From positions 38,750,001 through 38,814,000 of the forward strand of contig OZ286463.1 of the NCBI GenBank assembly GCA_965644265.1: a DNA stretch of 64,000 nucleotides, read 5' to 3'. The translations under genes and the position numbers were made by a program. This DNA comes from Glycera tridactyla. Its lineage: Eukaryota. The notes under the pieces were generated by a model, which was not told the DNA's origin, made no database searches, and saw nothing but the letters and a program-made list of their open reading frames with translations. Positions 40,897 to 64,000 of the stretch are shown here, one piece after another; position 1 is the stretch's first letter, and every line of letters starts with the position of its first letter.

Positions 40897-42388
40897 NNNN
40901 NNNNNNNNNNNNNNNNNNNNNNNNNNNNNNNNNNNNNNNNNNNNNNNNNNNNNNNNNNNNNNNNNNNNNNNNNNNNNNNNNNNNNNNNNNNNNNNNNNNN
41001 NNNNNNNNNNNNNNNNNNNNNNNNNNNNNNNNNNNNNNNNNNNNNNNNNNNNNNNNNNNNNNNNNNNNNNNNNNNNNNNNNNNNNNNNNNNNNNNNNNNN
41101 NNNNNNNNNNNNNNNNNNNNNNNNNNNNNNNNNNNNNNNNNNNNNNNNNNNNNNNNNNNNNNNNNNNNNGTAAATATAATGACTTACAGTCTTGTAATCC
41201 TTAACAATTTCACCCGACTCTACAATTATATTCCTTGGCAGGCCTGTCCAGGTTTGAACTTGGAGTACCCATTCACACCTGGGTGACATGGAGTGATGGA
41301 CTACAGAGATTCCACTCAGTTACCTCCACACACAGGTGTCTCCTTTGTGAGATGGGTAGATCAACTAGTCTGGGTTTGTAGCCAGCTTGGAACCCTGGAA
41401 AAAGTATGGAATTTGGCTTAGAGCTTTTTCATGTCTAGAACAAGCTAAAGGGTCTTGAAAATCCATGTCTTTGTATGAAAAAGTATGGAATCTTCATTCC
41501 TGGCCAATGCACAGGTGAGTAGCATATCATTGCACAGAGTATTCGAAACAATTGCATTACCAATTAATAAGAAAAGACAGGCAAGTCATCATTGAATTTA
41601 GATTGACCAATTATTGCCGCTGATTGCCATCACGCTACCTCAGGTGACACTGCCCCCCCCCCCCCCCCCATTGGCCTGTAAAAATAGAATTTGGGTCTGG
41701 AAAATATAAGGGAAAAGTATGGAATATGATACAACTTACCAAGAGTAAGGGTCGTTGAAAGGGCATCGTACTCACTAGCAAGCATCACATTACACAACAT
41801 TCAACACGACAGTTCTGACTCTGACAAAACAGCTTTCGCCAACATCCTACGTTGATTGGGCCTTCTGTGAGCTGGAATTTTCGGGTCGAACTATTTTCTA
41901 CATGAGGGTTATTGTAGCCAAAGCTGACTTGGCATATATTTAGATGCAAGCAAATGTGTCAGTGATTGCACTTGATGAAATGTGCCCACCCTCATGCCGC
42001 AGGCACCAATGCTGGTTAAGAAGAACTGTTCCAGATGCTCATACAGTGGGTGCTGGTGCTGGCTGCCACCAAACTGCTTGCCATCATACAGTGCTGTCTT
42101 AACAGGCCATGACTTTCATGGTGGGTAGATACTAGCAATGTTTCACTTCGTCGTTTTTTTTTTCCAAATCGTTGTACACAGCATCCAAATTAAGGTTATA
42201 TCTCATCTATATGAAAAAGGTTGTGGTGGTAATTGCCATTTCTGAAAGTTGATTTGGTAACATTTTCAACATTCTAATCAAGGTCAAATCCTTGACATTA
42301 CTAAACAGATATTCGTATATGTCAGTGGATTTAACGTGATCGCCATAACGCCCTCTCATCCACGATGTGGCCATCTCAAGGGCACTGG

Positions 42389-47789: not shown

Positions 47790-50495
47790 ATGCTGTACAA
47801 AAGCCATGCATCACCGAGGAAGTCGAAGTTGTACACAACCAAATCAAGAGATGAAGAAAAGAAGATCACAGAAATCCTGAGGTGGCTGGAAGAAGGTGAA
47901 GTCAACGCCTCGGAAATAAAGAAGAAGATCAAACAGTATGAGAATGAAGAAGAAGCGCAGGATGAGAAAAGAACAACTGAACCACAGACTGAATGCGGCC
48001 CCAAACGACAAATGAATAAAACCAACGAACACAGTGAGTGTAAATTTCCCAATATGTACTTTGATCCTCTGAAGCCGCCACCCTCTGAATTGTGGAAGCG
48101 ATCGACCCACAACAAAAGTGAAAGTTTGTCCACCACGCGGGAAAAACCAGGCCGACCACGTTGGCGGCAACCGATCAAAAGGTGCCCACTAAGCCCGGAC
48201 AATGACCCCGCAATCGGCGTATCGATACATACAGACACAATGTGCCACTGACACCGCGCAACCAGAAAGAAGCACATCCAACATAGACCAAATTAAAGCT
48301 GATTTATTTCTGAGCAGTGACGACTCAGAACCCGATACATCTCCAAAGAGACTCAAGAGCGTGATACATGTTGTGAAGAAAGATAAGCCACGAGATATGA
48401 CTCCGAATGACTGGGGGAAAAAAACCGACTCTGTACAATCCACGTGAGTTTGAGTGCCAGAAGAAATTCACCAGCCTTAACACCATGTATAGACATCGGA
48501 GAGAAGCATGTGGGACACAGAAATGGACATATGTGTGTCCATACTGTAGCACTAAAATCATGAGACGCAACAATTTCCATCGCCATATCCAGAGAAAACA
48601 CCCCGACCAGAAATTGTTTGACAATTACATAATCGAAGCGAAGAAATCAAAAGAAAGAAGAAATGAGACCTTCTACAACCCAATCATGGCGGCATCTACT
48701 CCAGTCGTGAAAAGACCAGCCGATGTTACTACCAAACAGACTCAGAAACCAAAATTCAGGATCGCCTCACAGAAAAGGAGAGCTGGCGCAAGCTCACCTG
48801 TCATACCATCTAAACGGGTGAACAAATCAGCAAAACCGCGAGACATCTCCAAAACAATGGAAGCACATGCTGCCAACCACATGCGAAAAGTAAAGGCAAC
48901 AACCACTTCAGAGAAGGTATCAAAGACTGAGCCTATCCCACAGGGAACACAGCCTGCACACGCACAAACCCCAAACAGAAGGGAATGCCTAGATACATCA
49001 AGAGGCAAACATACAGAGATCGAACGACTCCCACCACCCTCCACCGACATCCCAACTATATGCCAGGAGTCGGTGACGAATGTGGGAATGATCAATGAGA
49101 ACTACGATGACCTGCTACCTTCCAACTATGACATGCAAGAAGTGATCCCGGAGTTATTATTGGACCCGGCGGATATGGTCTTTAATGGAGAAAATGGAAT
49201 TCTGGTAGTGATATCCACGGTCAATAACACACCTGAGACATCTGAGAATATGAAATCTGAAACCATCATGACAGGAACGAAGCTACCATCGACCAGTCTA
49301 TGCAACCACAATTCTGGGGACAAGGCATTGAACAAGCAAGTGAGAATGACCCACGGAGAGATGAATAAAACACCAACAACAATTGGTACTAGCCCCCACA
49401 CAGACCTATATGGATCGCCGAAAGAGCTGAATACACACATCGAGAGAACGGACAAACTAGAGGGGATTCCCATCTTAATCGACCAGGACCATGTATTACA
49501 CAAATACACGCCACACGATCAAGAAGTAAAGAATGTGGTGACCAAATTGGAAGAAGACCCCCTTTTCCTGGCTTTATTGGGCGGAGACGATACGGCTAGC
49601 AGTGAAACTGACACAGAGACAATGCCATTAGCTGGCACTACAATTGGTACTCCAGAAAGTCCACTAAGGAGAACCTCAAGTGATGTACACATGGACGTAT
49701 CCAAAATTGAAAGTGGCACCAAGGCAGATGTAATCACCGAACCTAAGCACAATAGAAACTTTGACAATCTATTCAAAGGTGACTTTCAATTTGAATATAA
49801 ACCAAGTTCATCCGGCCATATTGTGACACCTCCAGCCACCTCACCGCTGATCAAAACGCTGGCTTTATTGGGATCACCTGCCATAACTGAAATCACAACC
49901 CATAAAACCAAGCTGATGAGGAACGAAAAACGAACGTGCCCTGCACTTGAATCGATCCTGATTAACTTGGAAATGAATCTAGATGTGCTAAACATGCAAC
50001 ACAATAACAAACCGTTGAAACAAAATCGAAAATCATTCAAATTGGTGGATGAATGTTCACAGAATATGGCCAGCCAACCCTATCACAAGTGAACCAATAA
50101 CAGAAACTGAAAACCCAGCAACATTGATGAATTCCCCGTTCATCAAGATGTGCGAGGAACTTCGAGGCAATTTACCACCGATGATAGGTGGCATATCAAA
50201 CCATGAATATGATCGCATCGAAATAGAAGTCGACCGAATTTGCTCGGATTTCCAGGCTACAGCAAATATCAGTATGACACCAGTCGACACAATTTGCGAG
50301 GACTTTCAGAAATCACTCCGAAACACGACGACCGGAGATAATGGAGTAAAGAGCAGATGCAGATCGAAACTAAGTCTCTCAAAGAAAAAACGGAAATCAC
50401 TTCCGGTGGTCAGCATCATCAAACGGGACATCGACTCAGAAGATGAATCCGAGACCGAGATGACGACCAGCGCGATGCAGAGAAATGGAAAGTGA
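47790..50495 (+). pseudogene. Frameshifted intronless ORF (~900 aa if joined) with two zinc fingers (C2HC-like, C2H2) and long S/T/K/E-rich low-complexity regions; probably TE-borne
   Basis: Overlapping ORFs 47790-48251, 48202-48447, 48407-50092, 50049-50495 in successive +1 frames; CQKKFTSLNTMYRHRREAC and CPYCSTKIMRRNNFHRHIQRKH. Confidence 0.7.
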
Positions 50496-51312
50496 GGATC
50501 AACCAACCGATGATGGGAGTCGGGAGAGGTCTAGGAGCCCCATCAAGCAAGAATTTGATAGTTTATAACCCTTGTTAGCTTTAGAATAGCAGAGAGGTAC
50601 AGCATGAAAGAAGAGGGAGGGAATAACCGCGAGCCAATTTAATGAGGTACCTCCTGGGGTGATCTGAGAGATGCAGCAGCAAGATGGGCATCCTTTGGGA
50701 CCATGATGAATGCCGGCAGGGCAAAACTAGGTCACCGCAACACAGCGAACATCTGGCAATAACAACCTCCCCGTGATAGTCCAGGAAGTGATCTTGATTT
50801 CCCCAGGAGATCCGCTACCTACTCTCATCTGACAGGAAGTTAGTGTCCAGTTATTCACCTTGTAGTCAACATGTGTGGGTTGAAATAGATGCAATCTCCT
50901 AAAAAATCGGACCAGTAGAACTCTAGTTATAAGGATTCCAAGAAGAAATTCCAGGTGGCAACCAGTGAAAAAGGTAAAGAAAAATCCTGTTTTCAACTTG
51001 CTCAAAATGTATGATGGAGGTGTTTGTAAACATTTATATTGATATATGTTGTGAAGAATATTCTTGTCAACCCATGGTATTTCTCTCATTAAATGCGAAA
51101 GAAAGCGAAACCATGTTTTTGGGAAGGATTCACCCGAGGGTTTAGGGTCATATATTGTGCATTCTGTACTGTGTGTGTGGGGGGGGGAGGATGTGTGTAT
51201 GTGTGTGGCTGTCTTTCTATTTGATTACAGTCAAACTTGTACTTAGCAAGACTTGTATTTAGCAAGAACTTGTCTTAAGCAATAGGCTTTTGTTCATCCC
51301 ACCTGAGTACTT

Positions 51313-54300
51313 TTCCAAAATCCCATCATATAGAAAGTGGTAGAACTTGCAAAGGAAGACTATACAATAAATAGGAGCTAGATAGAAGAATTTGCCTATA
51401 AAAGTGAGTTGATCGAAAATATGGTAGAAATCAAACATTGTTTGAAGTTGTTTTTTTTTGGTTTTGAAAAATCAAACTTCAAACATGAAAAATCAATCAA
51501 GTCCCAACACTATTGTCTATCCTTCCCATTCATGTCTGATGAATCTCTTGATCCACTCATGGTTTCCCCCCAAGAATCACCTTTTAGGACTGATGACCGG
51601 ACTACTTTCAGCCCATAGGAAATCAGCTCTGTCAACCAGCAGATTCTGATACCTATTAGGTCATGGTATTGAGAGCAGTCTCACATACTAATGTCACCTG
51701 CCTTGTCATAGGGACAACATAAATTCATGCATTAACAGAATTATCATAGGAGATTTCTGCATGCAGGATATAGGGCCTATGTACACAACTCATCTTGGGT
51801 GACAACCTCCATTGAGTTCAGTGCTCATGTCTCATAGCTACTACCCATCAGTGCAACCAATCATTTGCTTATCTATGCAGTGTATCTATTTTGAAATTCA
51901 ACTTAAACAAATCACTTTGAATTCTCTCATGCTGAGTCTCATTCCATCCTATGTACAATCATTATTTGACATTCATTCTACTGAAATTTAATCTATTGCT
52001 AGGATTTGTATATAACTGTTTATTTATCAATTTCTTTTTAGTTCATTCATGGATCCATGAGGATCATAGCCGATCAGAAGCATTTTAACATGCCATGACT
52101 GAAAATATATACCATCAGAGGCCAATTGATAATAGATGGTGGCATGACTCAAATCAGCATGTGTGGAGTATATAACACCACTGTAGTTCCTTTTTATGAA
52201 ATTTATCTGCCTGGTATATCCTCAGTCTCAGACCCATGTGTCCACACCCAACATAACTGAGACCAGACTTACAAACTAAACTTTCGAGCTAGTTACCTGA
52301 CTAGATACTCTGTCTGAGGCAAATTTCTATTATGCAACACAAAATAATCCCACAAACTTCCAGTTTCTTGTTCAACCTAGTTGTGATATCACTAGAATTG
52401 AAATAATCCCTCAAAAGTTGGGTTTTCAGGTTAGAATGACACCTAGCAAAGTGGTTGTTCCTTTTCATTTGCCAGATGGCTGATACCATAATTTGATCAA
52501 AATCTATTATATAGATAGGCATAGCTTTCCACAATGGTGGATTTTCTTTTGTTTTGAGGCACAACTCAGAACAGATGAGCTATGAGTATGATTCAGGGAT
52601 TTTCATGCTCAGGAATATATATGGGTTTTTCGGGCACAATGATAAAGATTTCATGTGCCATTTCGTGTTTGTGTGTGCCCCAAACCATGTAAAGTGTGGA
52701 TGTGCCTCAAACCATGTAAAGAGTGTATATATGGTCTGATGTGCCCTTTCACAACTTTATGTGCCATTTGCCACAGGGCACAGCGCAAATTGCAACTTGG
52801 GTACACCCATCCACCCCTTCAGTTTCATTTCACCCCTACAACATTTTAATTGGTCAAATTCTTTATTTTCTGAGAATGATTTTATTTATTATTCTACCAT
52901 TTTCCCCACAATACTACTAGCCCTTTGGGAGCTGAATCCCCCACTGTCTAACTCAAGCACTTCTTTCAATGATTATCTCCCCCTTTCTACTTTAACAACT
53001 TTCACATCTCCATCAAATCATCACATTTTCATCTTCCATTGGCATTAAAGATCTGGGCACTTGTTGCCGGTGACCTGCAGAAGTCTCTTCTGCAGATCCC
53101 AGACACACTTGACCAGATCCTTGATGATCATCCATCCATCCATCCATCCATCCATCCATCCATCCATCCATCCATCCATCCATCCATCCATCCTCACCAC
53201 CATCATTCATTCTTATTCCATGGATTGATTGCTGCTCTGACTGTAGTTGCTGTAATTGCTCTGTCCATTGGAATGATGTTTGTTGAACTTGAAAAGGTTA
53301 ACACTGTGGCAGTGTTAAAGAAGGTTCTCCTGTGTTGCACCTGTTGTAAGTTTTGCACTGAGATGAAGGTACCACAATATCTGGAGCAATTGGGCCTCGA
53401 GATGGCTAGTCGTGTGGGTATGATGCATGCCCCGCCATTTTACCAGCTCATGCAGCGGCGAGGTCCAACCTTCAGATGGTCACCGAGATTGCACCAACGC
53501 CTGGAGTGGCGTCGTAACCTGTTTTATGAAATCGTTGACTGAAAAGAAAGCACCACCGTATTAGGAGCCATTGGTCCTCGAGATGGCTAGTCGTGTGGGT
53601 ATGATGCATGCCCCGCCATTTTACTAGCTCATGCAGCGGCGAGGTCCAACCTTCTGATGGTCACCGAGATTGCACCAACGCCTGGAGTGGCGTCGTCTAA
53701 GTTGCACGTAACCTGTTTTATAAAATCGTTCACTGAAAAGAAAGCACCACCGTACTAGGAGCCATTGGGCCTTGAGATGGCTAGCCGTGAGGGTATGATG
53801 CATGCCCCGCCATTTTACCAGCTGATGCAGTGGCGAGGTCCAACCTCCTGACTGTCAAGCTGATAGCTTGACACACTTCGCACCTGTACCCGGATCTCTC
53901 AACGTCGTTTGATGACATTGCACCAACGCCTGGAGAGGCGTCGTCTTGTTCACATGTACCTTATTCTGATATGTTTGCTGAAGTTGTGGATGCGCCTGGA
54001 TTGGCGTTATCGTCAGTGAATTTGGGGCCAGAGCAGCCCAAAAATGAGTTGGATGATGCATCCTGCTCGCCTTGTGTTCGTGTCTCACGTGGACAAGTGA
54101 GGCCAAGCAATGTTTTCTTGCCTGCAACCAGTTCTTGTCGCCGTCGTTATCGTTCTGTTGTGTTCAGTCCTACTTACAAAACCAGATGTGCTCATGTACA
54201 TTCATCATCGTCATCATGTGCTCAGTGCTCTCGGTGTTGCTCAGTTCACTCACAAGGCATGTTGGATAGAATTATGTGCCTTGCAATTTTTGTATTCACC

Positions 54301-56248
54301 CTGTGACGTCACCTCGTGCCTACTCACCTACGTGGTGCAGTTTTTTACGCTATACATGCTTATACCTATCCCTAGTGTCACGCGCGTCATCATACTTGCA
54401 ATCCTCACACTTGTTGCCACCTGGTTCTCAACTGCCATCAACACGCTGCTGACATAGCCTTGGAGATTAGCTACCTCCACTTGTGCTTTCTCGTTCACGT
54501 GCTCACGAACTTCGATGACCGGCAACATTGGTAATGGTTTCAACCTTCAACCCCTGGATCCAGCCTGCTCGCGTCGTACACATGTGACATCTTCTTTAAG
54601 CCAATGGTGCTCATGGTGTTTTACTTGTTCTTGCTTGGACTCATTTTCCCATCACCCATGCCCGCTAACAGGAATTCTTCGTGTCGTTCATGAACTCAGT
54701 GACTCAGTACCAGCACGTTATGATCATGATTTAATGCAGATGAACTTTCCTGCCAATTTGACTTCAACAAGCAAATTGCTTGGGAACATTTTCATATTCT
54801 TCTCTTTCAGGTTTTGGTTTTGGTGTTGTATACAACCCAAATGTCATATTTACTTGTGTACTATGTGTCTTCTTACGTCTATAATCATCTGTCTCTATAA
54901 TCAAGTCTATTTTTATCCTCACCAGGTTCCCTTCACACAGGGACTGTGTGGCTTCTCCGCTAGGCTTCGAAGCTTTTCAGCGGGGGAGGAGTTATAACCA
55001 TGAAATTTAGGACATCTATCCCCACCTCTATTCATATCTATTCCTCACTCTATCTTCAACTATCCATTCACACTGTCTTCAACTATCCATTCATACATCT
55101 CTATCTTCAGCTATCCATTCACATCTATTCCAACCTGGAACTATTCCATATACTCTCCATACACTTCTTTTCACACACCTACAATCATACAGACAAACAT
55201 ATATTCCTTTAAACACACAGATGCACACACAGAGAAAACACACACACAGACAGACAAACATACAGACACACTTGTACACCCATACAGATGCAATCACTCA
55301 TGTACATCTTTGAAACCAGCCTTTACTGAAATGTCTTACTGCATTATGCACTGGCATTTTTCCGTAATCTTGAGTCTCTCTAATGAAGAATACCTGTGTA
55401 CAATAACAGGATAATCTTACTCCCTGCTCATTCATGCATGTATACGATATGCTCATCACCTGAAGTCACACGATCATCATGGCCTGCACACCATCTGTCA
55501 CACACCACTGATTACACTCTCCAATCTCCATGGCAATCACCACACTAACCAATGTAATACCACATACACTCCACCACTGACCTACCACCACCCACATAGC
55601 ACATGGAATCTCACATCAGGAATTCACCACACCCTCCAGAAAAACACACCCACACTCTCATGACACATTCCATATTCTACCATCATACGATCACTGCCAT
55701 TCACTACACTCTGGCTACTTCCCAGAGATTTCCAGAGACATATTGATTGAGTACAGTTTAACACCACCACATACTACCCACACATCTCATTGTCAATTCT
55801 CAATGTCTATGGTGGCCATCTTGGTTCACTCAATTAGTGAGTTGGACATGATTAAGATAACTCCTTCGTGACTTAGGTAACCTGATTGTGTAAACTTCCG
55901 TGACTATGATAACTTGATTATGTGATGTTGTAGTTAAGTCGATGTTGTGCTCAATGAAGTGTGAAATTGCCACTGATGCATCTTCTGGAGGGTTATGCAA
56001 CTGCTGTACGTTGGATCTATATAACCAGCGGCTGAGTTGTACTCAGCATCTCTTTATATCTTAGACACCTACATGCTAGCATCCTTGCTGCCAGTCAGAA
56101 GCACTGCATTGGTTGAACTTGGTTCTTCCAATAAATTGTGCTAAAATGACAGTCATATAGTTGTTCACTACTTGTGTCTCAGACACACCATTTTCTCAGA
56201 TTTATAAGTTGCACATGATTAAAATCTTGATCAAGGATGTCTCACTAA
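51313..56248 (+). repeat. Left arm of ~4.93-kb inverted duplication
   Basis: Reverse complement of 59000-63931; mirrored ORF coordinates sum to 115244 (outer part) and 115248 (inner part). Confidence 0.95.
53390..53945. repeat. Three ~182-194-bp tandem units inside the left arm (mirror at ~61303-61858)
   Basis: TTGGGCCTCGAGATGGCTAGTCGTGTGGGTATGATGCATGCCCCGCCATTTTA... recurs at ~53390, 53572, 53766. Confidence 0.9.
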
Positions 56249-56949
56249 CTCTAGAGTGGTCTGGTAGTTTAGCTACACGTAGGCAGGACAGGCTGCATTA
56301 TGTCACTTGTGCCGCAGCACACACATCACACCCTAGTGAATATAACACAAATGACACGTAGCCATATACAGTGGGGGACATTCTGGGGCCACATGAGCAT
56401 GACTCTCCCCATGAAGTTCACCTCACAACCACAAAAGTTTTAGCTTATATGTGTTGATTAAACTAGTGAATGTTCTGCTCTTCGGAGCACCACATTTCTT
56501 TACTCAACACACCATGATCGATTTCTATATTTCACAAGAATCTCTTCTCTCACTCCTAATTTCGATTATGAAAAATCTTCACATATCATCAATGTCCAAT
56601 TCTTCATGTGCATTCTGGATTAATTCCATACACTATCCACCTGAAATTTAATTCCGCCAAAATCGGGTCTCAATTACAACATCTCAAAAAGAAATGCTTA
56701 TTTCAAACAATGAATCAATTTTATAAAGCTGCCCAGGAAGGCCCACTAGTGGGCCTTCCTGGCCTAGCTAGGCTCATCAGCTGGGGCCTTCACAGCTTCT
56801 CGCTGTTGTAGGCCTTCAGTTGACTGCCCTAACATCCACCTGAAGAAGGAGAGCATTCGACTCCGAAATTGATTGTGGGCAGAGCGCTCAGGGTCACTGA
56901 AAGTCTATATATACGATAATTCTGAGGAGCTGTACGGTTGAGTTGTGTC

Positions 56950-57222
56950 NNNNNNNNNNNNNNNNNNNNNNNNNNNNNNNNNNNNNNNNNNNNNNNNNNN
57001 NNNNNNNNNNNNNNNNNNNNNNNNNNNNNNNNNNNNNNNNNNNNNNNNNNNNNNNNNNNNNNNNNNNNNNNNNNNNNNNNNNNNNNNNNNNNNNNNNNNN
57101 NNNNNNNNNNNNNNNNNNNNNNNNNNNNNNNNNNNNNNNNNNNNNNNNNNNNNNNNNNNNNNNNNNNNNNNNNNNNNNNNNNNNNNNNNNNNNNNNNNNN
57201 NNNNNNNNNNNNNNNNNNNNNN
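56950..57222. other. Assembly gap (273 N) inside the spacer of the inverted duplication
   Basis: N run; other gaps at 50-220, 8932-9062, 17625-17771, 40897-41169. Confidence 0.99.
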
Positions 57223-57477
57223 GTGGGACATACCTGAGGATTCCAGTCTGAAACTCTCTTTCCTGGCGTTAATGTCGGCTGTCCCGGCGTGTGGGTGGGT
57301 TAGAGGGTGAGTGGGTGAGTGAGTAAGTGAGCGAGTGTGTGAGCGAGTGTGTGTGCGTTGTTCACACCTCCCCCCTCGCCAACCGTAGCTTGTTAGCCGA
57401 GGATAGGCGTGAACATCAAACAGAGGGTTCATGTATGGATGTATAGATGGATGGATGGGTATATGGATGGATTGCAC

Positions 57478-57560
57478 CGTCCCGGTTTAACCCGGGCTGC
57501 CCCGTCTCGACCACACCATTGTGGCCAAGACGGGCTGCGTCCCGGGTTAACCCGGGATGG
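57478..57560. repeat. Two CCCGGGTTAACCCGGG-type palindromes flanking an imperfect hairpin
   Basis: CCCGGTTTAACCCGGG-CTGC-CCCGTCTCGACCAC...GTGGCCAAGACGGG-CTGCGT-CCCGGGTTAACCCGGG; same family as 46568-46700. Confidence 0.8.
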
Positions 57561-57971
57561 TGGTTGAGAGGGGGCACAACAGAGACACAAACTGCAAACC
57601 AATTCAAGAATGCCGTCTGCAGAGATATCATCTGGTAATGTCATCGTTGTTTTGCCTAAAGACTCTCAACACTGGCCTAGGCTGGGCCGCACCAAGGCTA
57701 TTAAGCAACCAACCATTGTTTACTGATGTGCTTCTGGACCCTACCCAGACTGTATATAGACAGTTTTAACATGCCCCGGAGGTGGCAGGACCTGGACATT
57801 ATCCGCAAGGCTTTCCAGTATCGATGTAGATGTAGATGTAGGCGGCATGTACACTGGCGGCATGTACACTGTACAGTAGTGACTGTCTAGGGTAGGAACA
57901 AAACTATTGGTTGATATGATTTGGGTGACAGTGTTGTTTATTTTTCTGATCCTGCTTTGAATGAATCCACA

Positions 57972-58995
57972 CATCATCATCATCATATCGGTTTCGTGGC
58001 GCATGTCACATTCCGATTTCCTGCTTCTCTCACCTTCCACCTTCCTCCGCCAGATGTCTCTTTCTAACGCACACACAGTTGCTTCTTCCCATGACATATT
58101 CAGGTTGTTTCTGAGGTCCTTTTCCACCGATCTTATCCATGTTGTTTTGTGACCTCCCCTTGGCATTTTCACTGGTCTTCTTGCTTCATTTAGGGCTATT
58201 TTGGCTGGTGTTGTATCTGGTAACCGTTGTACATGCCCAAACCACTGTAATCTCCTCTCTGTGATAATTTTGCTCCACTCTCTTTGTTTCACAATTCTTT
58301 GTAGATCAGCATTTGATATTTTCTTGGGCCATTTTATATTCAGTACATATCTCAGTAATCTTCTTTGAAAGGCGTCAATGCGTCCTAGAAGATCTTTCGT
58401 CATCGTCCATAATTCCGACTTGTATAAAAAAAAATACTGGCAACACATGCATTGAATCCTTTCAGCTTTATGTGAGTTGGTGCCCACAGATGTTTCAGTT
58501 TTTTCTCAGCTTCTAGAGCGAGGATTTTCCTCCGGTTGAAATCCGTTTCTGTATCGATCAGACTTCCAAGATATTCGCACTTTTTCCATTCGCATGTACT
58601 TGCTTTTCTATTTATAGTGTATTCCTCTGTTTTCTCCTCATTACATACTAGGTGTCGTTCTTTAAGCTTTCCAGGGACGATATTTTTGTAGTGTTGGATG
58701 ATGTGCTTGTTTCCTCCAGTGACCCAGCTGATGTCGTCTGCATACTGAGTTTCTATAATCACTGATGCTTGTTTATCTTCTTCTGCAGCATAACTGTGAT
58801 CAGTCTGATGTTGAGAGCGAGGGATGTTAATCAAAGTGTTATCACTGTGATAATTGTGATCGATGATATGTCTTGGTACTGGTTTGAGAGCATCAGCTAG
58901 ATATAATATGAAAAGTGTTGGACTGAGACAGTCACCTTGTGGAGTCCAAATTTGGGTGGTGAAACTAAGGTTCTCCACGTTCACTCCCACAACAT
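57972..58995 (-). mobile_element. RTE-clade LINE, 5'-truncated, with RT C-terminal half and (TGA)n tail
   Basis: TPQGDCLSPTLF, QYADD, YLGSLI, RIDAFQRRLLRYVLNIKWP, RRLQWFGHVQR, RGGHKTTW; one frameshift in the A run near 58430. Confidence 0.92.
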
Positions 58996-58999
58996 ACTA

Positions 59000-61900
59000 T
59001 TAGTGAGACATCCTTGATCAAGATTTTAATCATGTGCAACTTATAAATCTGAGAAAATGGTGTGTCTGAGACACAAGTAGTGAACAACTATATGACTGTC
59101 ATTTTAGCACAATTTATTGGAAGAACCAAGTTCAACCAATGCAGTGCTTCTGACTGGCAGCAAGGATGCTAGCATGTAGGTGTCTAAGATATAAAGAGAT
59201 GCTGAGTACAACTCAGCCGCTGGTTATATAGATCCAACGTACAGCAGTTGCATAACCCTCCAGAAGATGCATCAGTGGCAATTTCACACTTCATTGAGCA
59301 CAACATCGACTTAACTACAACATCACATAATCAAGTTATCATAGTCACGGAAGTTTACACAATCAGGTTACCTAAGTCACGAAGGAGTTATCTTAATCAT
59401 GTCCAACTCACTAATTGAGTGAACCAAGATGGCCACCATAGACATTGAGAATTGACAATGAGATGTGTGGGTAGTATGTGGTGGTGTTAAACTGTACTCA
59501 ATCAATATGTCTCTGGAAATCTCTGGGAAGTAGCCAGAGTGTAGTGAATGGCAGTGATCGTATGATGGTAGAATATGGAATGTGTCATGAGAGTGTGGGT
59601 GTGTTTTTCTGGAGGGTGTGGTGAATTCCTGATGTGAGATTCCATGTGCTATGTGGGTGGTGGTAGGTCAGTGGTGGAGTGTATGTGGTATTACATTGGT
59701 TAGTGTGGTGATTGCCATGGAGATTGGAGAGTGTAATCAGTGGTGTGTGACAGATGGTGTGCAGGCCATGATGATCGTGTGACTTCAGGTGATGAGCATA
59801 TCGTATACATGCATGAATGAGCAGGGAGTAAGATTATCCTGTTATTGTACACAGGTATTCTTCATTAGAGAGACTCAAGATTACGGAAAAATGCCAGTGC
59901 ATAATGCAGTAAGACATTTCAGTAAAGGCTGGTTTCAAAGATGTACATGAGTGATTGCATCTGTATGGGTGTACAAGTGTGTCTGTATGTTTGTCTGTCT
60001 GTGTGTGTGTTTTCTCTGTGTGTGCATCTGTGTGTTTAAAGGAATATATGTTTGTCTGTATGATTGTAGGTGTGTGAAAAGAAGTGTATGGAGAGTATAT
60101 GGAATAGTTCCAGGTTGGAATAGATGTGAATGGATAGCTGAAGATAGAGATGTATGAATGGATAGTTGAAGACAGTGTGAATGGATAGTTGAAGATAGAG
60201 TGAGGAATAGATATGAATAGAGGTGGGGATAGATGTCCTAAATTTCATGGTTATAACTCCTCCCCCGCTGAAAAGCTTCGAAGCCTAGCGGAGAAGCCAC
60301 ACAGTCCCTGTGTGAAGGGAACCTGGTGAGGATAAAAATAGACTTGATTATAGAGACAGATGATTATAGACGTAAGAAGACACATAGTACACAAGTAAAT
60401 ATGACATTTGGGTTGTATACAACACCAAAACCAAAACCTGAAAGAGAAGAATATGAAAATGTTCCCAAGCAATTTGCTTGTTGAAGTCAAATTGGCAGGA
60501 AAGTTCATCTGCATTAAATCATGATCATAACGTGCTGGTACTGAGTCACTGAGTTCATGAACGACACGAAGAATTCCTGTTAGCGGGCATGGGTGATGGG
60601 AAAATGAGTCCAAGCAAGAACAAGTAAAACACCATGAGCACCATTGGCTTAAAGAAGATGTCACATGTGTACGACGCGAGCAGGCTGGATCCAGGGGTTG
60701 AAGGTTGAAACCATTACCAATGTTGCCGGTCATCGAAGTTCGTGAGCACGTGAACGAGAAAGCACAAGTGGAGGTAGCTAATCTCCAAGGCTATGTCAGC
60801 AGCGTGTTGATGGCAGTTGAGAACCAGGTGGCAACAAGTGTGAGGATTGCAAGTATGATGACGCGCGTGACACTAGGGATAGGTATAAGCATGTATAGCG
60901 TAAAAAACTGCACCACGTAGGTGAGTAGGCACGAGGTGACGTCACAGGGTGAATACAAAAATTGCAAGGCACATAATTCTATCCAACATGCCTTGTGAGT
61001 GAACTGAGCAACACCGAGAGCACTGAGCACATGATGACGATGATGAATGTACATGAGCACATCTGGTTTTGTAAGTAGGACTGAACACAACAGAACGATA
61101 ACGACGGCGACAAGAACTGGTTGCAGGCAAGAAAACATTGCTTGGCCTCACTTGTCCACGTGAGACACGAACACAAGGCGAGCAGGATGCATCATCCAAC
61201 TCATTTTTGGGCTGCTCTGGCCCCAAATTCACTGACGATAACGCCAATCCAGGCGCATCCACAACTTCAGCAAACATATCAGAATAAGGTACATGTGAAC
61301 AAGACGACGCCTCTCCAGGCGTTGGTGCAATGTCATCAAACGACGTTGAGAGATCCGGGTACAGGTGCGAAGTGTGTCAAGCTATCAGCTTGACAGTCAG
61401 GAGGTTGGACCTCGCCACTGCATCAGCTGGTAAAATGGCGGGGCATGCATCATACCCTCACGGCTAGCCATCTCAAGGCCCAATGGCTCCTAGTACGGTG
61501 GTGCTTTCTTTTCAGTGAACGATTTTATAAAACAGGTTACGTGCAACTTAGACGACGCCACTCCAGGCGTTGGTGCAATCTCGGTGACCATCAGAAGGTT
61601 GGACCTCGCCGCTGCATGAGCTAGTAAAATGGCGGGGCATGCATCATACCCACACGACTAGCCATCTCGAGGCCCAATGGCTCCTAATACGGTGGTGCTT
61701 TCTTTTCAGTCAACGATTTCATAAAACAGGTTACGACGCCACTCCAGGCGTTGGTGCAATCTCGGTGACCATCTGAAGGTTGGACCTCGCCGCTGCATGA
61801 GCTGGTAAAATGGCGGGGCATGCATCATACCCACACGACTAGCCATCTCGAGGCCCAATTGCTCCAGATATTGTGGTACCTTCTTCTCAGTGCAAAACTT

Positions 61901-63931
61901 ACAACAGGTGCAACACAGGAGAACCTTCTTTAACACTGCCACAGTGTTAACCTTTTCAAGTTCAACAAACATCATTCCAATGGACAGAGCAATTACAGCA
62001 ACTACAGTCAGAGCAGCAATCAATCCATGGAATAAGAATGAATGATGGTGGTGAGGATGGATGGATGGATGGATGGATGGATGGATGGATGGATGGATGG
62101 ATGGATGGATGGATGATCATCAAGGATCTGGTCAAGTGTGTCTGGGATCTGCAGAAGAGACTTCTGCAGGTCACCGGCAACAAGTGCCCAGATCTTTAAT
62201 GCCAATGGAAGATGAAAATGTGATGATTTGATGGAGATGTGAAAGTTGTTAAAGTAGAAAGGGGGAGATAATCATTGAAAGAAGTGCTTGAGTTAGACAG
62301 TGGGGGATTCAGCTCCCAAAGGGCTAGTAGTATTGTGGGGAAAATGGTAGAATAATAAATAAAATCATTCTCAGAAAATAAAGAATTTGACCAATTAAAA
62401 TGTTGTAGGGGTGAAATGAAACTGAAGGGGTGGATGGGTGTACCCAAGTTGCAATTTGCGCTGTGCCCTGTGGCAAATGGCACATAAAGTTGTGAAAGGG
62501 CACATCAGACCATATATACACTCTTTACATGGTTTGAGGCACATCCACACTTTACATGGTTTGGGGCACACACAAACACAAAATGGCACATGAAATCTTT
62601 ATCATTGTGCCCGAAAAACCCATATATATTCCTGAGCATGAAAATCCCTGAATCATACTCATAGCTCATCTGTTCTGAGTTGTGCCTCAAAACAAAAGAA
62701 AATCCACCATTGTGGAAAGCTATGCCTATCTATATAATAGATTTTGATCAAATTATGGTATCAGCCATCTGGCAAATGAAAAGGAACAACCACTTTGCTA
62801 GGTGTCATTCTAACCTGAAAACCCAACTTTTGAGGGATTATTTCAATTCTAGTGATATCACAACTAGGTTGAACAAGAAACTGGAAGTTTGTGGGATTAT
62901 TTTGTGTTGCATAATAGAAATTTGCCTCAGACAGAGTATCTAGTCAGGTAACTAGCTCGAAAGTTTAGTTTGTAAGTCTGGTCTCAGTTATGTTGGGTGT
63001 GGACACATGGGTCTGAGACTGAGGATATACCAGGCAGATAAATTTCATAAAAAGGAACTACAGTGGTGTTATATACTCCACACATGCTGATTTGAGTCAT
63101 GCCACCATCTATTATCAATTGGCCTCTGATGGTATATATTTTCAGTCATGGCATGTTAAAATGCTTCTGATCGGCTATGATCCTCATGGATCCATGAATG
63201 AACTAAAAAGAAATTGATAAATAAACAGTTATATACAAATCCTAGCAATAGATTAAATTTCAGTAGAATGAATGTCAAATAATGATTGTACATAGGATGG
63301 AATGAGACTCAGCATGAGAGAATTCAAAGTGATTTGTTTAAGTTGAATTTCAAAATAGATACACTGCATAGATAAGCAAATGATTGGTTGCACTGATGGG
63401 TAGTAGCTATGAGACATGAGCACTGAACTCAATGGAGGTTGTCACCCAAGATGAGTTGTGTACATAGGCCCTATATCCTGCATGCAGAAATCTCCTATGA
63501 TAATTCTGTTAATGCATGAATTTATGTTGTCCCTATGACAAGGCAGGTGACATTAGTATGTGAGACTGCTCTCAATACCATGACCTAATAGGTATCAGAA
63601 TCTGCTGGTTGACAGAGCTGATTTCCTATGGGCTGAAAGTAGTCCGGTCATCAGTCCTAAAAGGTGATTCTTGGGGGGAATCCATGAGTGGATCAAGAGA
63701 TTCATCAGACATGAATGGGAAGGATAGACAATAGTGTTGGGACTTGATTGATTTTTCATGTTTGAAGTTTGATTTTTCAAAACCAAAAAAAAACAACTTC
63801 AAACAATGTTTGATTTCTACCATATTTTCGATCAACTCACTTTTATAGGCAAATTCTTCTATCTAGCTCCTATTTATTGTATAGTCTTCCTTTGCAAGTT
63901 CTACCACTTTCTATATGATGGGATTTTGGAA
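59000..63931 (-). repeat. Right arm of ~4.93-kb inverted duplication
   Basis: As for the left arm; differs by one (TCCA) unit and at least four substitutions that I spotted. Confidence 0.95.
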
Positions 63932-64000
63932 TATTCTCACACAAATGATAACAGAAATCACAAGGTGAACTGATGCAGTGGTCAGATGTGGATGATCCAC

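What the first reader, a model, noticed from the sequence alone, without database searches (positions are those of the whole stretch)
51313..63931. 12.6-kb palindrome-like structure: 4.93-kb arms nearly identical, 2.75-kb spacer
Seen: arms 51313-56248 and 59000-63931 are reverse complements; I spotted four substitutions (~51561, 52663, 53374, 53577) and one TCCA unit difference (no full alignment done). No TSD at the outer ends (GAGTACTT vs TATTCTCA) and no transposase in the spacer. An N gap lies between the arms. Inference: a very recent fold-back inverted duplication, or two alleles/contigs scaffolded head-to-head.
Basis: partly seen in the sequence, partly recalled or inferred. Interest (0 to 1): 0.7.

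Follow-up and report, generated by a model that had tools for sequence, protein, structure and literature searches.

The report
Inverted copy of retrotransposon half
The two near-identical 4.9-kb arms are real, but one is just a recent DNA-repair patch: an inverted copy of half of a neighbouring non-coding jumping gene plus 42 bases of its flank, an ordinary kind of structural change in gene-free animal DNA.

Summary
Arm A (51313-56248) and arm B (59000-63931) are reverse complements, differing by 4 substitutions and one CATC unit.

The arms are not a free-standing palindrome. Each is the 3' 4.9 kb of a ~9.6-kb non-coding LTR retrotransposon family, here called F. F has 1.2-kb LTRs, a primer-binding site, a polypurine tract and a 4-bp target duplication, and dozens of copies at 91-97% identity across the 2.04-Gb genome.

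- **Arm B** runs on into the rest of the element, as far as its 5' LTR.
- **Arm A** is a fragment.
- **Shared flank:** both arms carry 42 bp past the LTR end that occur nowhere else in the genome, so they are not independent insertions.
- **Empty site:** a paralogous locus on C7 shows that arm A sits where 979 bp of a hAT-like transposon and 129 bp of host repeat were lost. One junction has 3 bp of microhomology and the other is blunt.

Best reading: a recent templated insertion with deletion, from break repair or a replication template switch, copied from the neighbouring element.

Head-to-head haplotypes are not supported, because the flanks are not allelic. No reads were available to test the junctions. 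The arms lie on different contigs across an N gap, so their orientation and spacing rest on scaffolding. The scan noted other inverted duplications elsewhere in this genome. Low interest.

The parts
48582..50602 (+). Left part of a copy of repeat R3, the host of the arm-A insertion. It contains a 561-aa ORF at 48407-50092.
   Evidence: The C7 paralog L035 matches 48582-49323 (92%) and 50001-50602 (84%), and then carries on directly into the sequence found at 56250.
50603..51315 (+). The 5' 713 bp of a hAT-like TIR transposon, R2. The full element is 1692 bp with a 29-bp TIR and a 7-bp TSD, and the genome holds 560+ matches. It is cut off internally here, and its 3' 979 bp are absent.
   Evidence: Eight other copies align to 50600-51315 at 95-98% and carry on with sequence that is absent from the window.
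51313..56248 (+). Arm A. It comprises the internal part of LTR element F (51313-54992, with the polypurine tract at 54979-54992), the complete 3' LTR (54993-56206), and 42 bp of arm B's unique flank (56207-56248). Junction J1 has 3 bp of microhomology (TTC, 51313-51315). Junction J2 (56248|56249) is blunt.
56249..56949 (+). Right part of the same R3 copy, collinear with the left part. 129 bp of R3 are missing between the two parts.
   Evidence: L035 1501-2192 matches 56250-56949 at 91%. L035 1372-1500 has no counterpart in the window. The C18 copies agree.
56950..57222 (.). Assembly gap (273 N) between the contig that carries arm A and the contig that carries arm B.
   Evidence: Continuity across it is not shown.
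57223..57974 (.). Repeat-rich spacer DNA. It holds a GT-rich minisatellite and a short palindrome-bearing unit that recurs at many loci.
57975..58999 (-). 5'-truncated LINE fragment: the C-terminal part of the RT domain through to the 3' end, with an (ATG)n-type tail. Its 5' end abuts arm B to within 3 bp.
   Evidence: RVT_1, E=1e-8, profile positions 116-202. Family copies share the 3' end at 57975 and have ragged 5' ends. Reading frame shown.
59000..63931 (-). Arm B, the source copy. It comprises the 42-bp flank (59000-59041), the 3' LTR (59042-60255) and the internal part of F. The element carries on past 63931 to window-equivalent 67733, where a 100-N gap cuts its 5' LTR.
   Evidence: (59041-59379 matches 67395-67733 at 99.4%, in direct orientation), plus 27 and 28.

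Best explanation
Arm B is the 3' part of an ordinary, fairly young copy of F, a ~9.6-kb non-coding (LARD-like) LTR retrotransposon. Arm A is a secondary DNA-level copy of the last 4894 bp of that copy plus 42 bp of its 3' flank. It is inserted in inverted orientation a few kb away, inside a copy of another repeat (R3), where it replaces about 1.1 kb: the 3' 979 bp of a hAT-like transposon (R2) and 129 bp of R3.

In the vocabulary of cancer-genome structural variation this is a templated insertion with deletion, a 'bridge'.

Most likely course of events (inferred):
1. A DNA break or collapsed fork arose in or next to the hAT-like element, possibly from its own excision.
2. The 3' end ...TTC annealed by 3-bp microhomology inside the neighbouring LTR element.
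3. Synthesis copied 4.9 kb.
4. The new end was joined bluntly to the other side of the break.

The copy stops exactly where arm B meets a LINE fragment. This suggests the template had a physical DNA end there, so copying ran off the end. In that case 58999|59000 would be a third breakpoint of the same event.

Shown here: the repeat identity, the shared unique flank, the empty-site paralog, the junction sequences and the relative ages. Inferred: the order of steps, the origin of the break and the run-off idea.
For: - **Arms are real.** They differ at 4 bases plus one microsatellite unit.
- **The arm is part of a dispersed family.** At least 30 loci on many chromosomes match at 91-97% and all end at the same 3' terminus, arm position ~4894.
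- **F is an LTR element.** It has 1214-bp LTRs (TATAAC...TTTATA), the polypurine tract GGGGGAGGAG, a TGGTGCC... primer site just after the 5' LTR, and the 4-bp TSD AGTA in the C51 copy. No ORF hit any Pfam family.
- **Arm B is the longer copy.** It carries on for 3.8 kb more into F, up to a 5' LTR that is 99.4% identical to its 3' LTR. Arm A stops at an internal position.
- **The flank is unique.** The stretch after the LTR end occurs only at these two places in 2.04 Gb, allowing up to 3 mismatches.
- **There is an empty site.** The C7 paralog L035 and the C18 copies run straight from the equivalent of 50602, through 129 bp, to the equivalent of 56250, in the same orientation.
- **R2 is cut internally.** It stops at 51315 of the window, and its remainder is nowhere in the 74.5 kb examined.
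- **Junctions.** J1 has the microhomology TTC and J2 is blunt.
- **Relative ages.** Arm against arm is 0.08%. The two LTRs of arm B's copy differ by 0.59%. Other F copies differ by 3-9%.
- **Polarity of the differences.** 3 of the 4 substitutions are derived in arm A. This is the direction expected for error-prone repair synthesis, but it is not significant.
Against: - No reads test the junctions or the depth. The only public runs are Logan contigs that come from other family copies.
- The arms lie on different contigs, so 'inverted, 2.75 kb apart' rests on the scaffold join across the N gap.
- J2 has no microhomology, so a purely replicative template switch is not favoured at that junction.
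- The end of the copy coincides with the LINE 5' junction, and this is explained only by an untested idea. The LINE family looks old: its best other copy is 94% identical. A LINE integration at the time of the duplication is therefore unlikely.
- The 5' LTR of arm B's copy is visible for only 339 bp before a gap, so 'full-length source' is not proven.
Confidence: 0.66

Rival explanations
1. Assembly artefact. Arm A would be a chimeric or wrongly filled stretch of its contig, or contig B would be misplaced or misoriented, so no such palindrome exists in the animal.
For: - An N gap separates the arms.
- Arm A ends only 700 bp from its contig's end.
- A second gap cuts arm B's element at window-equivalent 67734.
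- There is no independent read support.
- The inner 2.67 kb of the arms is 100% identical.
Against: - Arm A is bounded by two clean novel junctions inside one contig, between collinear halves of R3.
- A mis-join needs shared sequence, and only 3 bp and 0 bp are shared at the two junctions.
- The arms differ at 4 bases and one microsatellite unit, so they were assembled separately.
- No other near-identical duplicates flank gaps in the 74.5 kb examined.
- A wrong orientation of contig B would change 'inverted' to 'direct', but the duplication would remain.
Confidence: 0.17
2. Two haplotypes of one locus, scaffolded head-to-head.
Against: Allelic contigs should stay homologous beyond the arms on at least one side, and here all four flanks are unrelated. 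Arm A is a 5'-truncated fragment embedded in R3, whereas arm B is part of a longer element. No third copy of the 42-bp flank exists on any unplaced scaffold.
Confidence: 0.05
3. Classical fold-back inverted duplication, or an L1-type LINE-bridged fold-back. A broken end folded back on itself, or a LINE cDNA bridged sister chromatids, and arm A was primed from the spacer end.
For: - The geometry fits: two inverted arms and a single-copy spacer of 2.75 kb. Reported spacers have a median of 3.4 kb (PMC3907307).
- A LINE fragment lies exactly at the inner end of arm B. L1-bridged fold-back inversions are known (PMC7058536).
Against: - There is no inverted microhomology at the spacer/arm-A junction (CTCTAG... 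against TAGTAT...).
- The duplication is only 4.9 kb and rejoins the same chromosome about 1.1 kb from where it left, rather than running outward.
- The LINE family is old: at most 94% identity to other copies, against 0.08% between the arms.
Confidence: 0.1
4. Two independent insertions of the same active LTR element close to each other, or two old copies homogenised by gene conversion.
For: F is a multi-copy family with young members.
Against: - The arms share 42 bp of unique non-element flank.
- Arm A has no 5' half, no 5' LTR and no TSD, and one of its ends is at an internal position of F.
- Gene conversion cannot create a shared flank.
- The duplication must be younger than arm B's insertion, whose LTRs differ by 0.59%.
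Confidence: 0.02

Closest known systems
Templated insertion with deletion: 'bridge' of templated insertions; FoSTeS/MMBIR-type or synthesis-dependent break repair (PMC7025897)
   Same: A kb-scale segment is copied, not moved. It is inserted at a second site and leaves a gap there. There are two junctions with 0-3 bp of microhomology, and the template is nearby.
   Different: Here it is seen as a fixed or germline feature of an animal reference genome, not in a tumour. The template is half of a retrotransposon. The end of the template coincides with a repeat boundary.
Fold-back inverted duplications with a single-copy spacer (PMC3907307)
   Same: Inverted arms lie around a 2.75-kb single-copy spacer, and the structure is of recent origin.
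   Different: There is no inverted microhomology at the spacer junction. The arm is short and is closed by a second junction 1.1 kb from the first on the original sequence. No terminal deletion or dicentric is implied.
Filler DNA and internal deletions after DNA-transposon excision: aborted gap repair, as known for P, Ac/Ds and Mu (from my own knowledge, not checked in papers here)
   Same: A TIR transposon keeps one end and loses the other end together with some flanking DNA. Foreign templated DNA fills the gap.
   Different: Filler DNA is usually tens of bp, whereas here it is 4.9 kb. Excision of R2 at this site is not shown.
LARD-type non-autonomous LTR retrotransposons (this applies to family F itself)
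   Same: Long LTRs, a primer-binding site, a polypurine tract, a 4-bp TSD, and a 7-kb internal region with no recognisable ORF.
   Different: Only ORFs of 70 aa or more were tested against Pfam. The autonomous partner was not identified.

Membership tests
Templated insertion with deletion ('bridge') | The inserted segment is a copy of a segment that is still present at its source. | tested here: met
   Arm B is retained with its own context, and only two copies of the unique flank exist in the genome.
Templated insertion with deletion ('bridge') | The host site is collinear on both sides and has lost some sequence. | tested here: met
   The C7 and C18 paralogs run from the equivalent of 50602 to the equivalent of 56250 in the same orientation. 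979 bp of R2 and 129 bp of R3 are missing.
Templated insertion with deletion ('bridge') | Junctions are non-homologous, with 0 to a few bp of microhomology. | tested here: met
   J1 has TTC (3 bp) and J2 has 0 bp.
Fold-back inverted duplication | Inverted arms are separated by a single-copy spacer. | tested here: met
   The spacer is 2751 bp and has no internal symmetry. This depends on the scaffold join.
Fold-back inverted duplication | [quoted passage not shown] | tested here: not met
   Window 56249... reads CTCTAG, while the reverse complement of ...58999 reads TAGTAT. That is 0 bp of microhomology.
Fold-back inverted duplication | The duplication runs outward from the spacer to a distant second break. 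| tested here: not met
   Arm A ends after 4936 bp and rejoins the same R3 copy.
Inversion with breakpoint duplications (staggered-break model) | The segment between the duplicates is inverted relative to the flanks. | tested here: not met
   R3-left and R3-right have the same orientation as in the paralogs.
False duplication of haplotigs | The flanks of the two copies are allelic. | tested here: not met
   All four flanks are unrelated.
False duplication of haplotigs | Each copy has half the read depth. | not testable with these tools
   Only Logan contigs of two small runs were available, and contig depth is not interpretable.
LTR retrotransposon (family F) | Direct long terminal repeats. 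| tested here: met
   The LTRs are 1214-1215 bp in copies L016 and L019-L021. In arm B's own copy, 339 bp of the 5' LTR are visible and match at 99.4%.
LTR retrotransposon (family F) | A primer-binding site after the 5' LTR, a polypurine tract before the 3' LTR, and a short TSD. | tested here: met
   TGGTGCC... lies 2 nt after the LTR, GGGGGAGGAG lies just before the 3' LTR, and the TSD AGTA is present in the C51 copy. Contigs from runs X1 and X2 show the same LTR-to-primer-site junction.
LTR retrotransposon (family F) | A gag/pol coding region, which would make the element autonomous. | tested here: not met
   No ORF exceeds 167 aa, and 10 ORFs gave no Pfam hit. F is therefore non-autonomous (LARD-like).
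L1-type LINE-bridged fold-back | The LINE insertion is contemporaneous with the duplication. | tested here: inconclusive
   The LINE abuts arm B to within 3 bp, but its family is low-copy and at most 94% identical to this copy. That points to an older insertion.

The most novel reading that the evidence does not exclude
All three breakpoints would belong to one germline event. These are the hAT-like element | arm A junction, the arm A | R3 junction, and the LINE | 42-bp flank junction. In that event a broken end copied the neighbouring duplex right up to a physical DNA end (run-off). This would make the locus a rare, junction-resolved natural example of one-ended break-induced copying, possibly started by DNA-transposon excision, in an animal germline. 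The resulting 4.9-kb near-perfect inverted repeat may still be polymorphic and prone to rearrangement.
Probability: 0.2. Interest if true: 0.4.

Novelty: new member of a known kind. Interest (0 to 1): 0.2.

Why it matters
It matters little for biology. The region has no recognisable gene or RNA, and the class of rearrangement is well known.

It has two uses:
- **As a cautionary case.** A striking 'palindrome' turned out to be a partial secondary copy of a dispersed retrotransposon.
- **As a worked example.** A paralogous empty site allowed base-level reconstruction of the event, giving the deletion size, the microhomology and the direction of copying.

If the arrangement is confirmed by reads, the 0.08%-diverged 4.9-kb inverted repeat could serve as a marker for structural polymorphism. 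It could also serve as a substrate for inversion of the 2.75-kb spacer in populations of this animal.

Tried and rejected
1. **Independent transposon insertions.** Rejected because of the shared unique 42-bp flank and because arm A lacks a 5' half.

2. **3' transduction by a LINE-like or Helitron-like element.** I considered this before the LTR structure was seen. Rejected because F has LTRs, a primer-binding site, a polypurine tract and a TSD, and arm A has no tail or TSD.

3. **My early reading that 56249/56250 is a terminus of repeat R3.** This was wrong, an artefact of where the query started. The paralogs carry on upstream and revealed the empty site.

4. **Inversion with staggered breaks.** Rejected because the spacer's left part is collinear with the left flank.

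5. **Reads.** What was laid on arm A came from other copies of F and R2, with loose ends at 56207 (the LTR-to-primer-site junction) and at 51315 (R2 continuing). Nothing crossed J1, J2 or the gap.

6. **The 5' end of F in more copies.** The LTR length came from loci already held.

7. **Rfam and tRNA scans of 48000-64000.** Nothing found.

8. **Organism.** I did not identify it and did not spend a large protein search on it.
Full report
**1. Observation**

The inverted repeat is real. The repeat finder gave two collinear pieces split only by a microsatellite. BLAST gave one 4936-column alignment at 99.84%.

A global alignment placed the differences exactly:
- substitutions at 51563, 52664, 53364 and 53575;
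- one CATC unit at 53129-53132.

The arms are 51313-56248 and 59000-63931, with 2751 bp between them. N runs lie at 56950-57222, inside the spacer, and at four other places in the window. In the 74.5 kb that I could assemble from the window and fetched loci, this is the only near-identical duplicate apart from an LTR pair.

**2. What the arms are**

The window is C11:38750001-38814000 of a 2.04-Gb, 207-piece eukaryotic assembly. Earlier notes of this scan call it animal DNA; I did not check that.

Arm A matches at least 30 other loci on many chromosomes at 91-97% identity. All of them stop at the same 3' point, arm position ~4894, which is window 56206.

The outer flank of arm B is shared with those other copies, but the outer flank of arm A is not. 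So the family is longer than the arm, and arm A is truncated.

Beyond the window's end, arm B's copy carries on for 3.8 kb. It ends, at a 100-N gap, in a second direct copy of the last 339 bp of the arm, at 99.4% identity. Other copies show that this repeat is a 1214-1215-bp LTR.

The LTR begins TATAAC and ends TTTATA. The other hallmarks are all present:
- a GGGGGAGGAG polypurine tract precedes the 3' LTR;
- TGGTGCC... follows the 5' LTR after 2 nt;
- the C51 copy has the 4-bp target duplication AGTA.

Contigs of two public runs that end at 56207 and carry on with ATGGTGCC... are the same LTR-to-primer-site junction in other copies.

The ~7-kb internal region has no ORF above 167 aa. Ten ORFs gave no Pfam match. 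It carries a 181-bp tandem repeat and the (CATC)n microsatellite.

Family F is therefore a ~9.6-kb non-autonomous, LARD-like LTR retrotransposon. Each arm is its 3' 4894 bp.

**3. The arms are not independent insertions**

Both arms carry on for 42 bp past the LTR end (56207-56248 and 59000-59041). The last 41 of those bases occur only at these two places in the whole genome, allowing up to 3 mismatches. So a piece of genomic DNA, element plus flank, was copied.

**4. Which arm is the copy**

Arm A is the copy.
- **On its left**, 50603-51315 is the 5' 713 bp of a 1692-bp TIR element, R2. R2 has a 29-bp TIR and a 7-bp TSD, looks hAT-like, and gives 560+ matches in the genome. Eight other copies align up to 51315 and then carry on with sequence that is absent from the window and its extension.
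- **On its right**, 56250-56949 belongs to another repeat, R3.

The closest R3 paralog (C7, locus L035) matches in three blocks:
- L035 1-733 matches window 48582-49323;
- L035 730-1371 matches window 50001-50602;
- after 129 bp more, L035 1501-2192 matches window 56250-56949, in the same orientation.

Two C18 copies agree. The paralogs are thus an empty site. In the window, one R3 copy first received R2. Later the 3' 979 bp of R2 and 129 bp of R3 were replaced by the 4936-bp inverted copy.

Junction J1 shares TTC between R2 and F. Junction J2 is blunt.

Arm B, by contrast, is in place within a longer element that has its own 5' LTR.

**5. Timing**

| Comparison | Divergence |
|---|---|
| Arm A against arm B | 0.08% |
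| The two LTRs of arm B's copy | 0.59% (2 of 339) |
| F copies against each other | 3-9% |

The copy is therefore younger than arm B's insertion, and recent.

Judged against the family consensus, 3 of the 4 substitutions are derived in arm A. One, a CpG transition, is derived in arm B. All four lie in the outer 2.3 kb. Neither pattern is significant.

**6. The spacer and the gap**

The spacer consists of the following pieces:
- R3-right (56249-56949);
- the 273-N gap;
- repeat-rich DNA (57223-57974);
- a LINE fragment on the minus strand (57975-58999).

The LINE fragment has RVT_1 at E=1e-8, matching profile positions 116-202. Its family shares a 3' end at 57975 and has ragged 5' ends.

The RT-like reading frame runs to within 3 bp of 59000. 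So the copy of arm B stops exactly at the LINE's 5' edge.

The LINE family is low-copy, and its best other member is 94% identical. The LINE therefore probably predates both F and the duplication.

A coincidence this exact is best explained by a physical DNA end at 59000 during the event. That would mean run-off copying, with 58999|59000 as a third breakpoint. This is inference only.

Continuity across the gap is not shown. The C7 paralog's downstream sequence does not match what follows the gap, and no contig crossed it. The arms lie on different contigs, so their relative orientation and distance depend on the scaffold. The existence of two copies in different contexts does not.

**7. Mechanism and comparison with known classes**

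It resembles fold-back inverted duplications in geometry and spacer size (PMC3907307). It fails two of their defining features: there is no inverted microhomology at the spacer junction, and the duplication is short and closed rather than running outward.

LINE-bridged fold-back (PMC7058536) is unlikely, because the LINE looks old.

An inversion by staggered breaks is excluded by the collinearity of the two R3 halves.

The break may have come from excision of the hAT-like element followed by aborted gap repair with template switching. That is a lead from general knowledge, not tested here.

**8. Artefact question**

Head-to-head haplotypes are not supported, because none of the four flanks is allelic.

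A chimeric contig would need two novel junctions, with 3 bp and 0 bp of overlap, placed so that the paralog-defined host sequence resumes 1.1 kb further on. That is unlikely, but it cannot be excluded without reads.

The decisive test, long reads and depth from the same individual, could not be run. The one run search returned only two small runs kept as contigs.

**9. Verdict**

The structure is a real-looking, recent but ordinary structural variant in gene-free, repeat-rich DNA: an inverted templated copy of half a retrotransposon. No Rfam family and no tRNA lie in 48-64 kb.

Earlier notes of this scan report other, older inverted duplications elsewhere in this genome. I did not test them.

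Noticed in passing
L011:6575-10000 (window-equivalent 69575-73000 and beyond): A DIRS-like tyrosine-recombinase retrotransposon. It has a 642-aa RT/RNase H ORF and a 349-aa Phage_integrase ORF. Copies on C10 and C1 are 100% identical and a C7 copy is 96% identical, so the family is very young and probably active.
   Followed up: partly
window 48407-50092 (within R3, 48582-50602): A 561-aa open frame with only weak, sub-threshold C2H2 zinc-finger matches, inside the repeated unit R3. The C7 paralog lacks the equivalent of 49324-50000.
   Followed up: no
window 50603-51315; full copies in L024-L031: A 1692-bp TIR element with a 29-bp TIR starting CATGAAAG and a 7-bp TSD. The genome holds 560+ matches, and copies are 95-98% alike. 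It is probably a recently active non-autonomous hAT-like transposon.
   Followed up: partly
window-equivalent 68500-69140 (L013/L012): Two fragments that are 84-89% similar to F's region 63729-64164 but lie in the opposite orientation, between the 100-N gap and the DIRS-like element. They look like an older, partial F-like remnant.
   Followed up: no
window 52660-52854: Contig depth in runs X1 and X2 jumps to 750-900, against 10-50 elsewhere, with loose ends at about 52727 and 52789. A ~60-bp piece of F is therefore shared with something very abundant in those runs.
   Followed up: no
window 57291-57582: A GT-rich minisatellite plus a unit carrying a CCCGGGTTAACCCGGG-type palindrome. It recurs at many loci, and in tandem arrays on C29 and C82.
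   Followed up: no
window 40897-41169 and 56950-57222: Two assembly gaps with the identical length of 273 N. The other gaps are 171, 131, 147 and 100 N.
   Followed up: no
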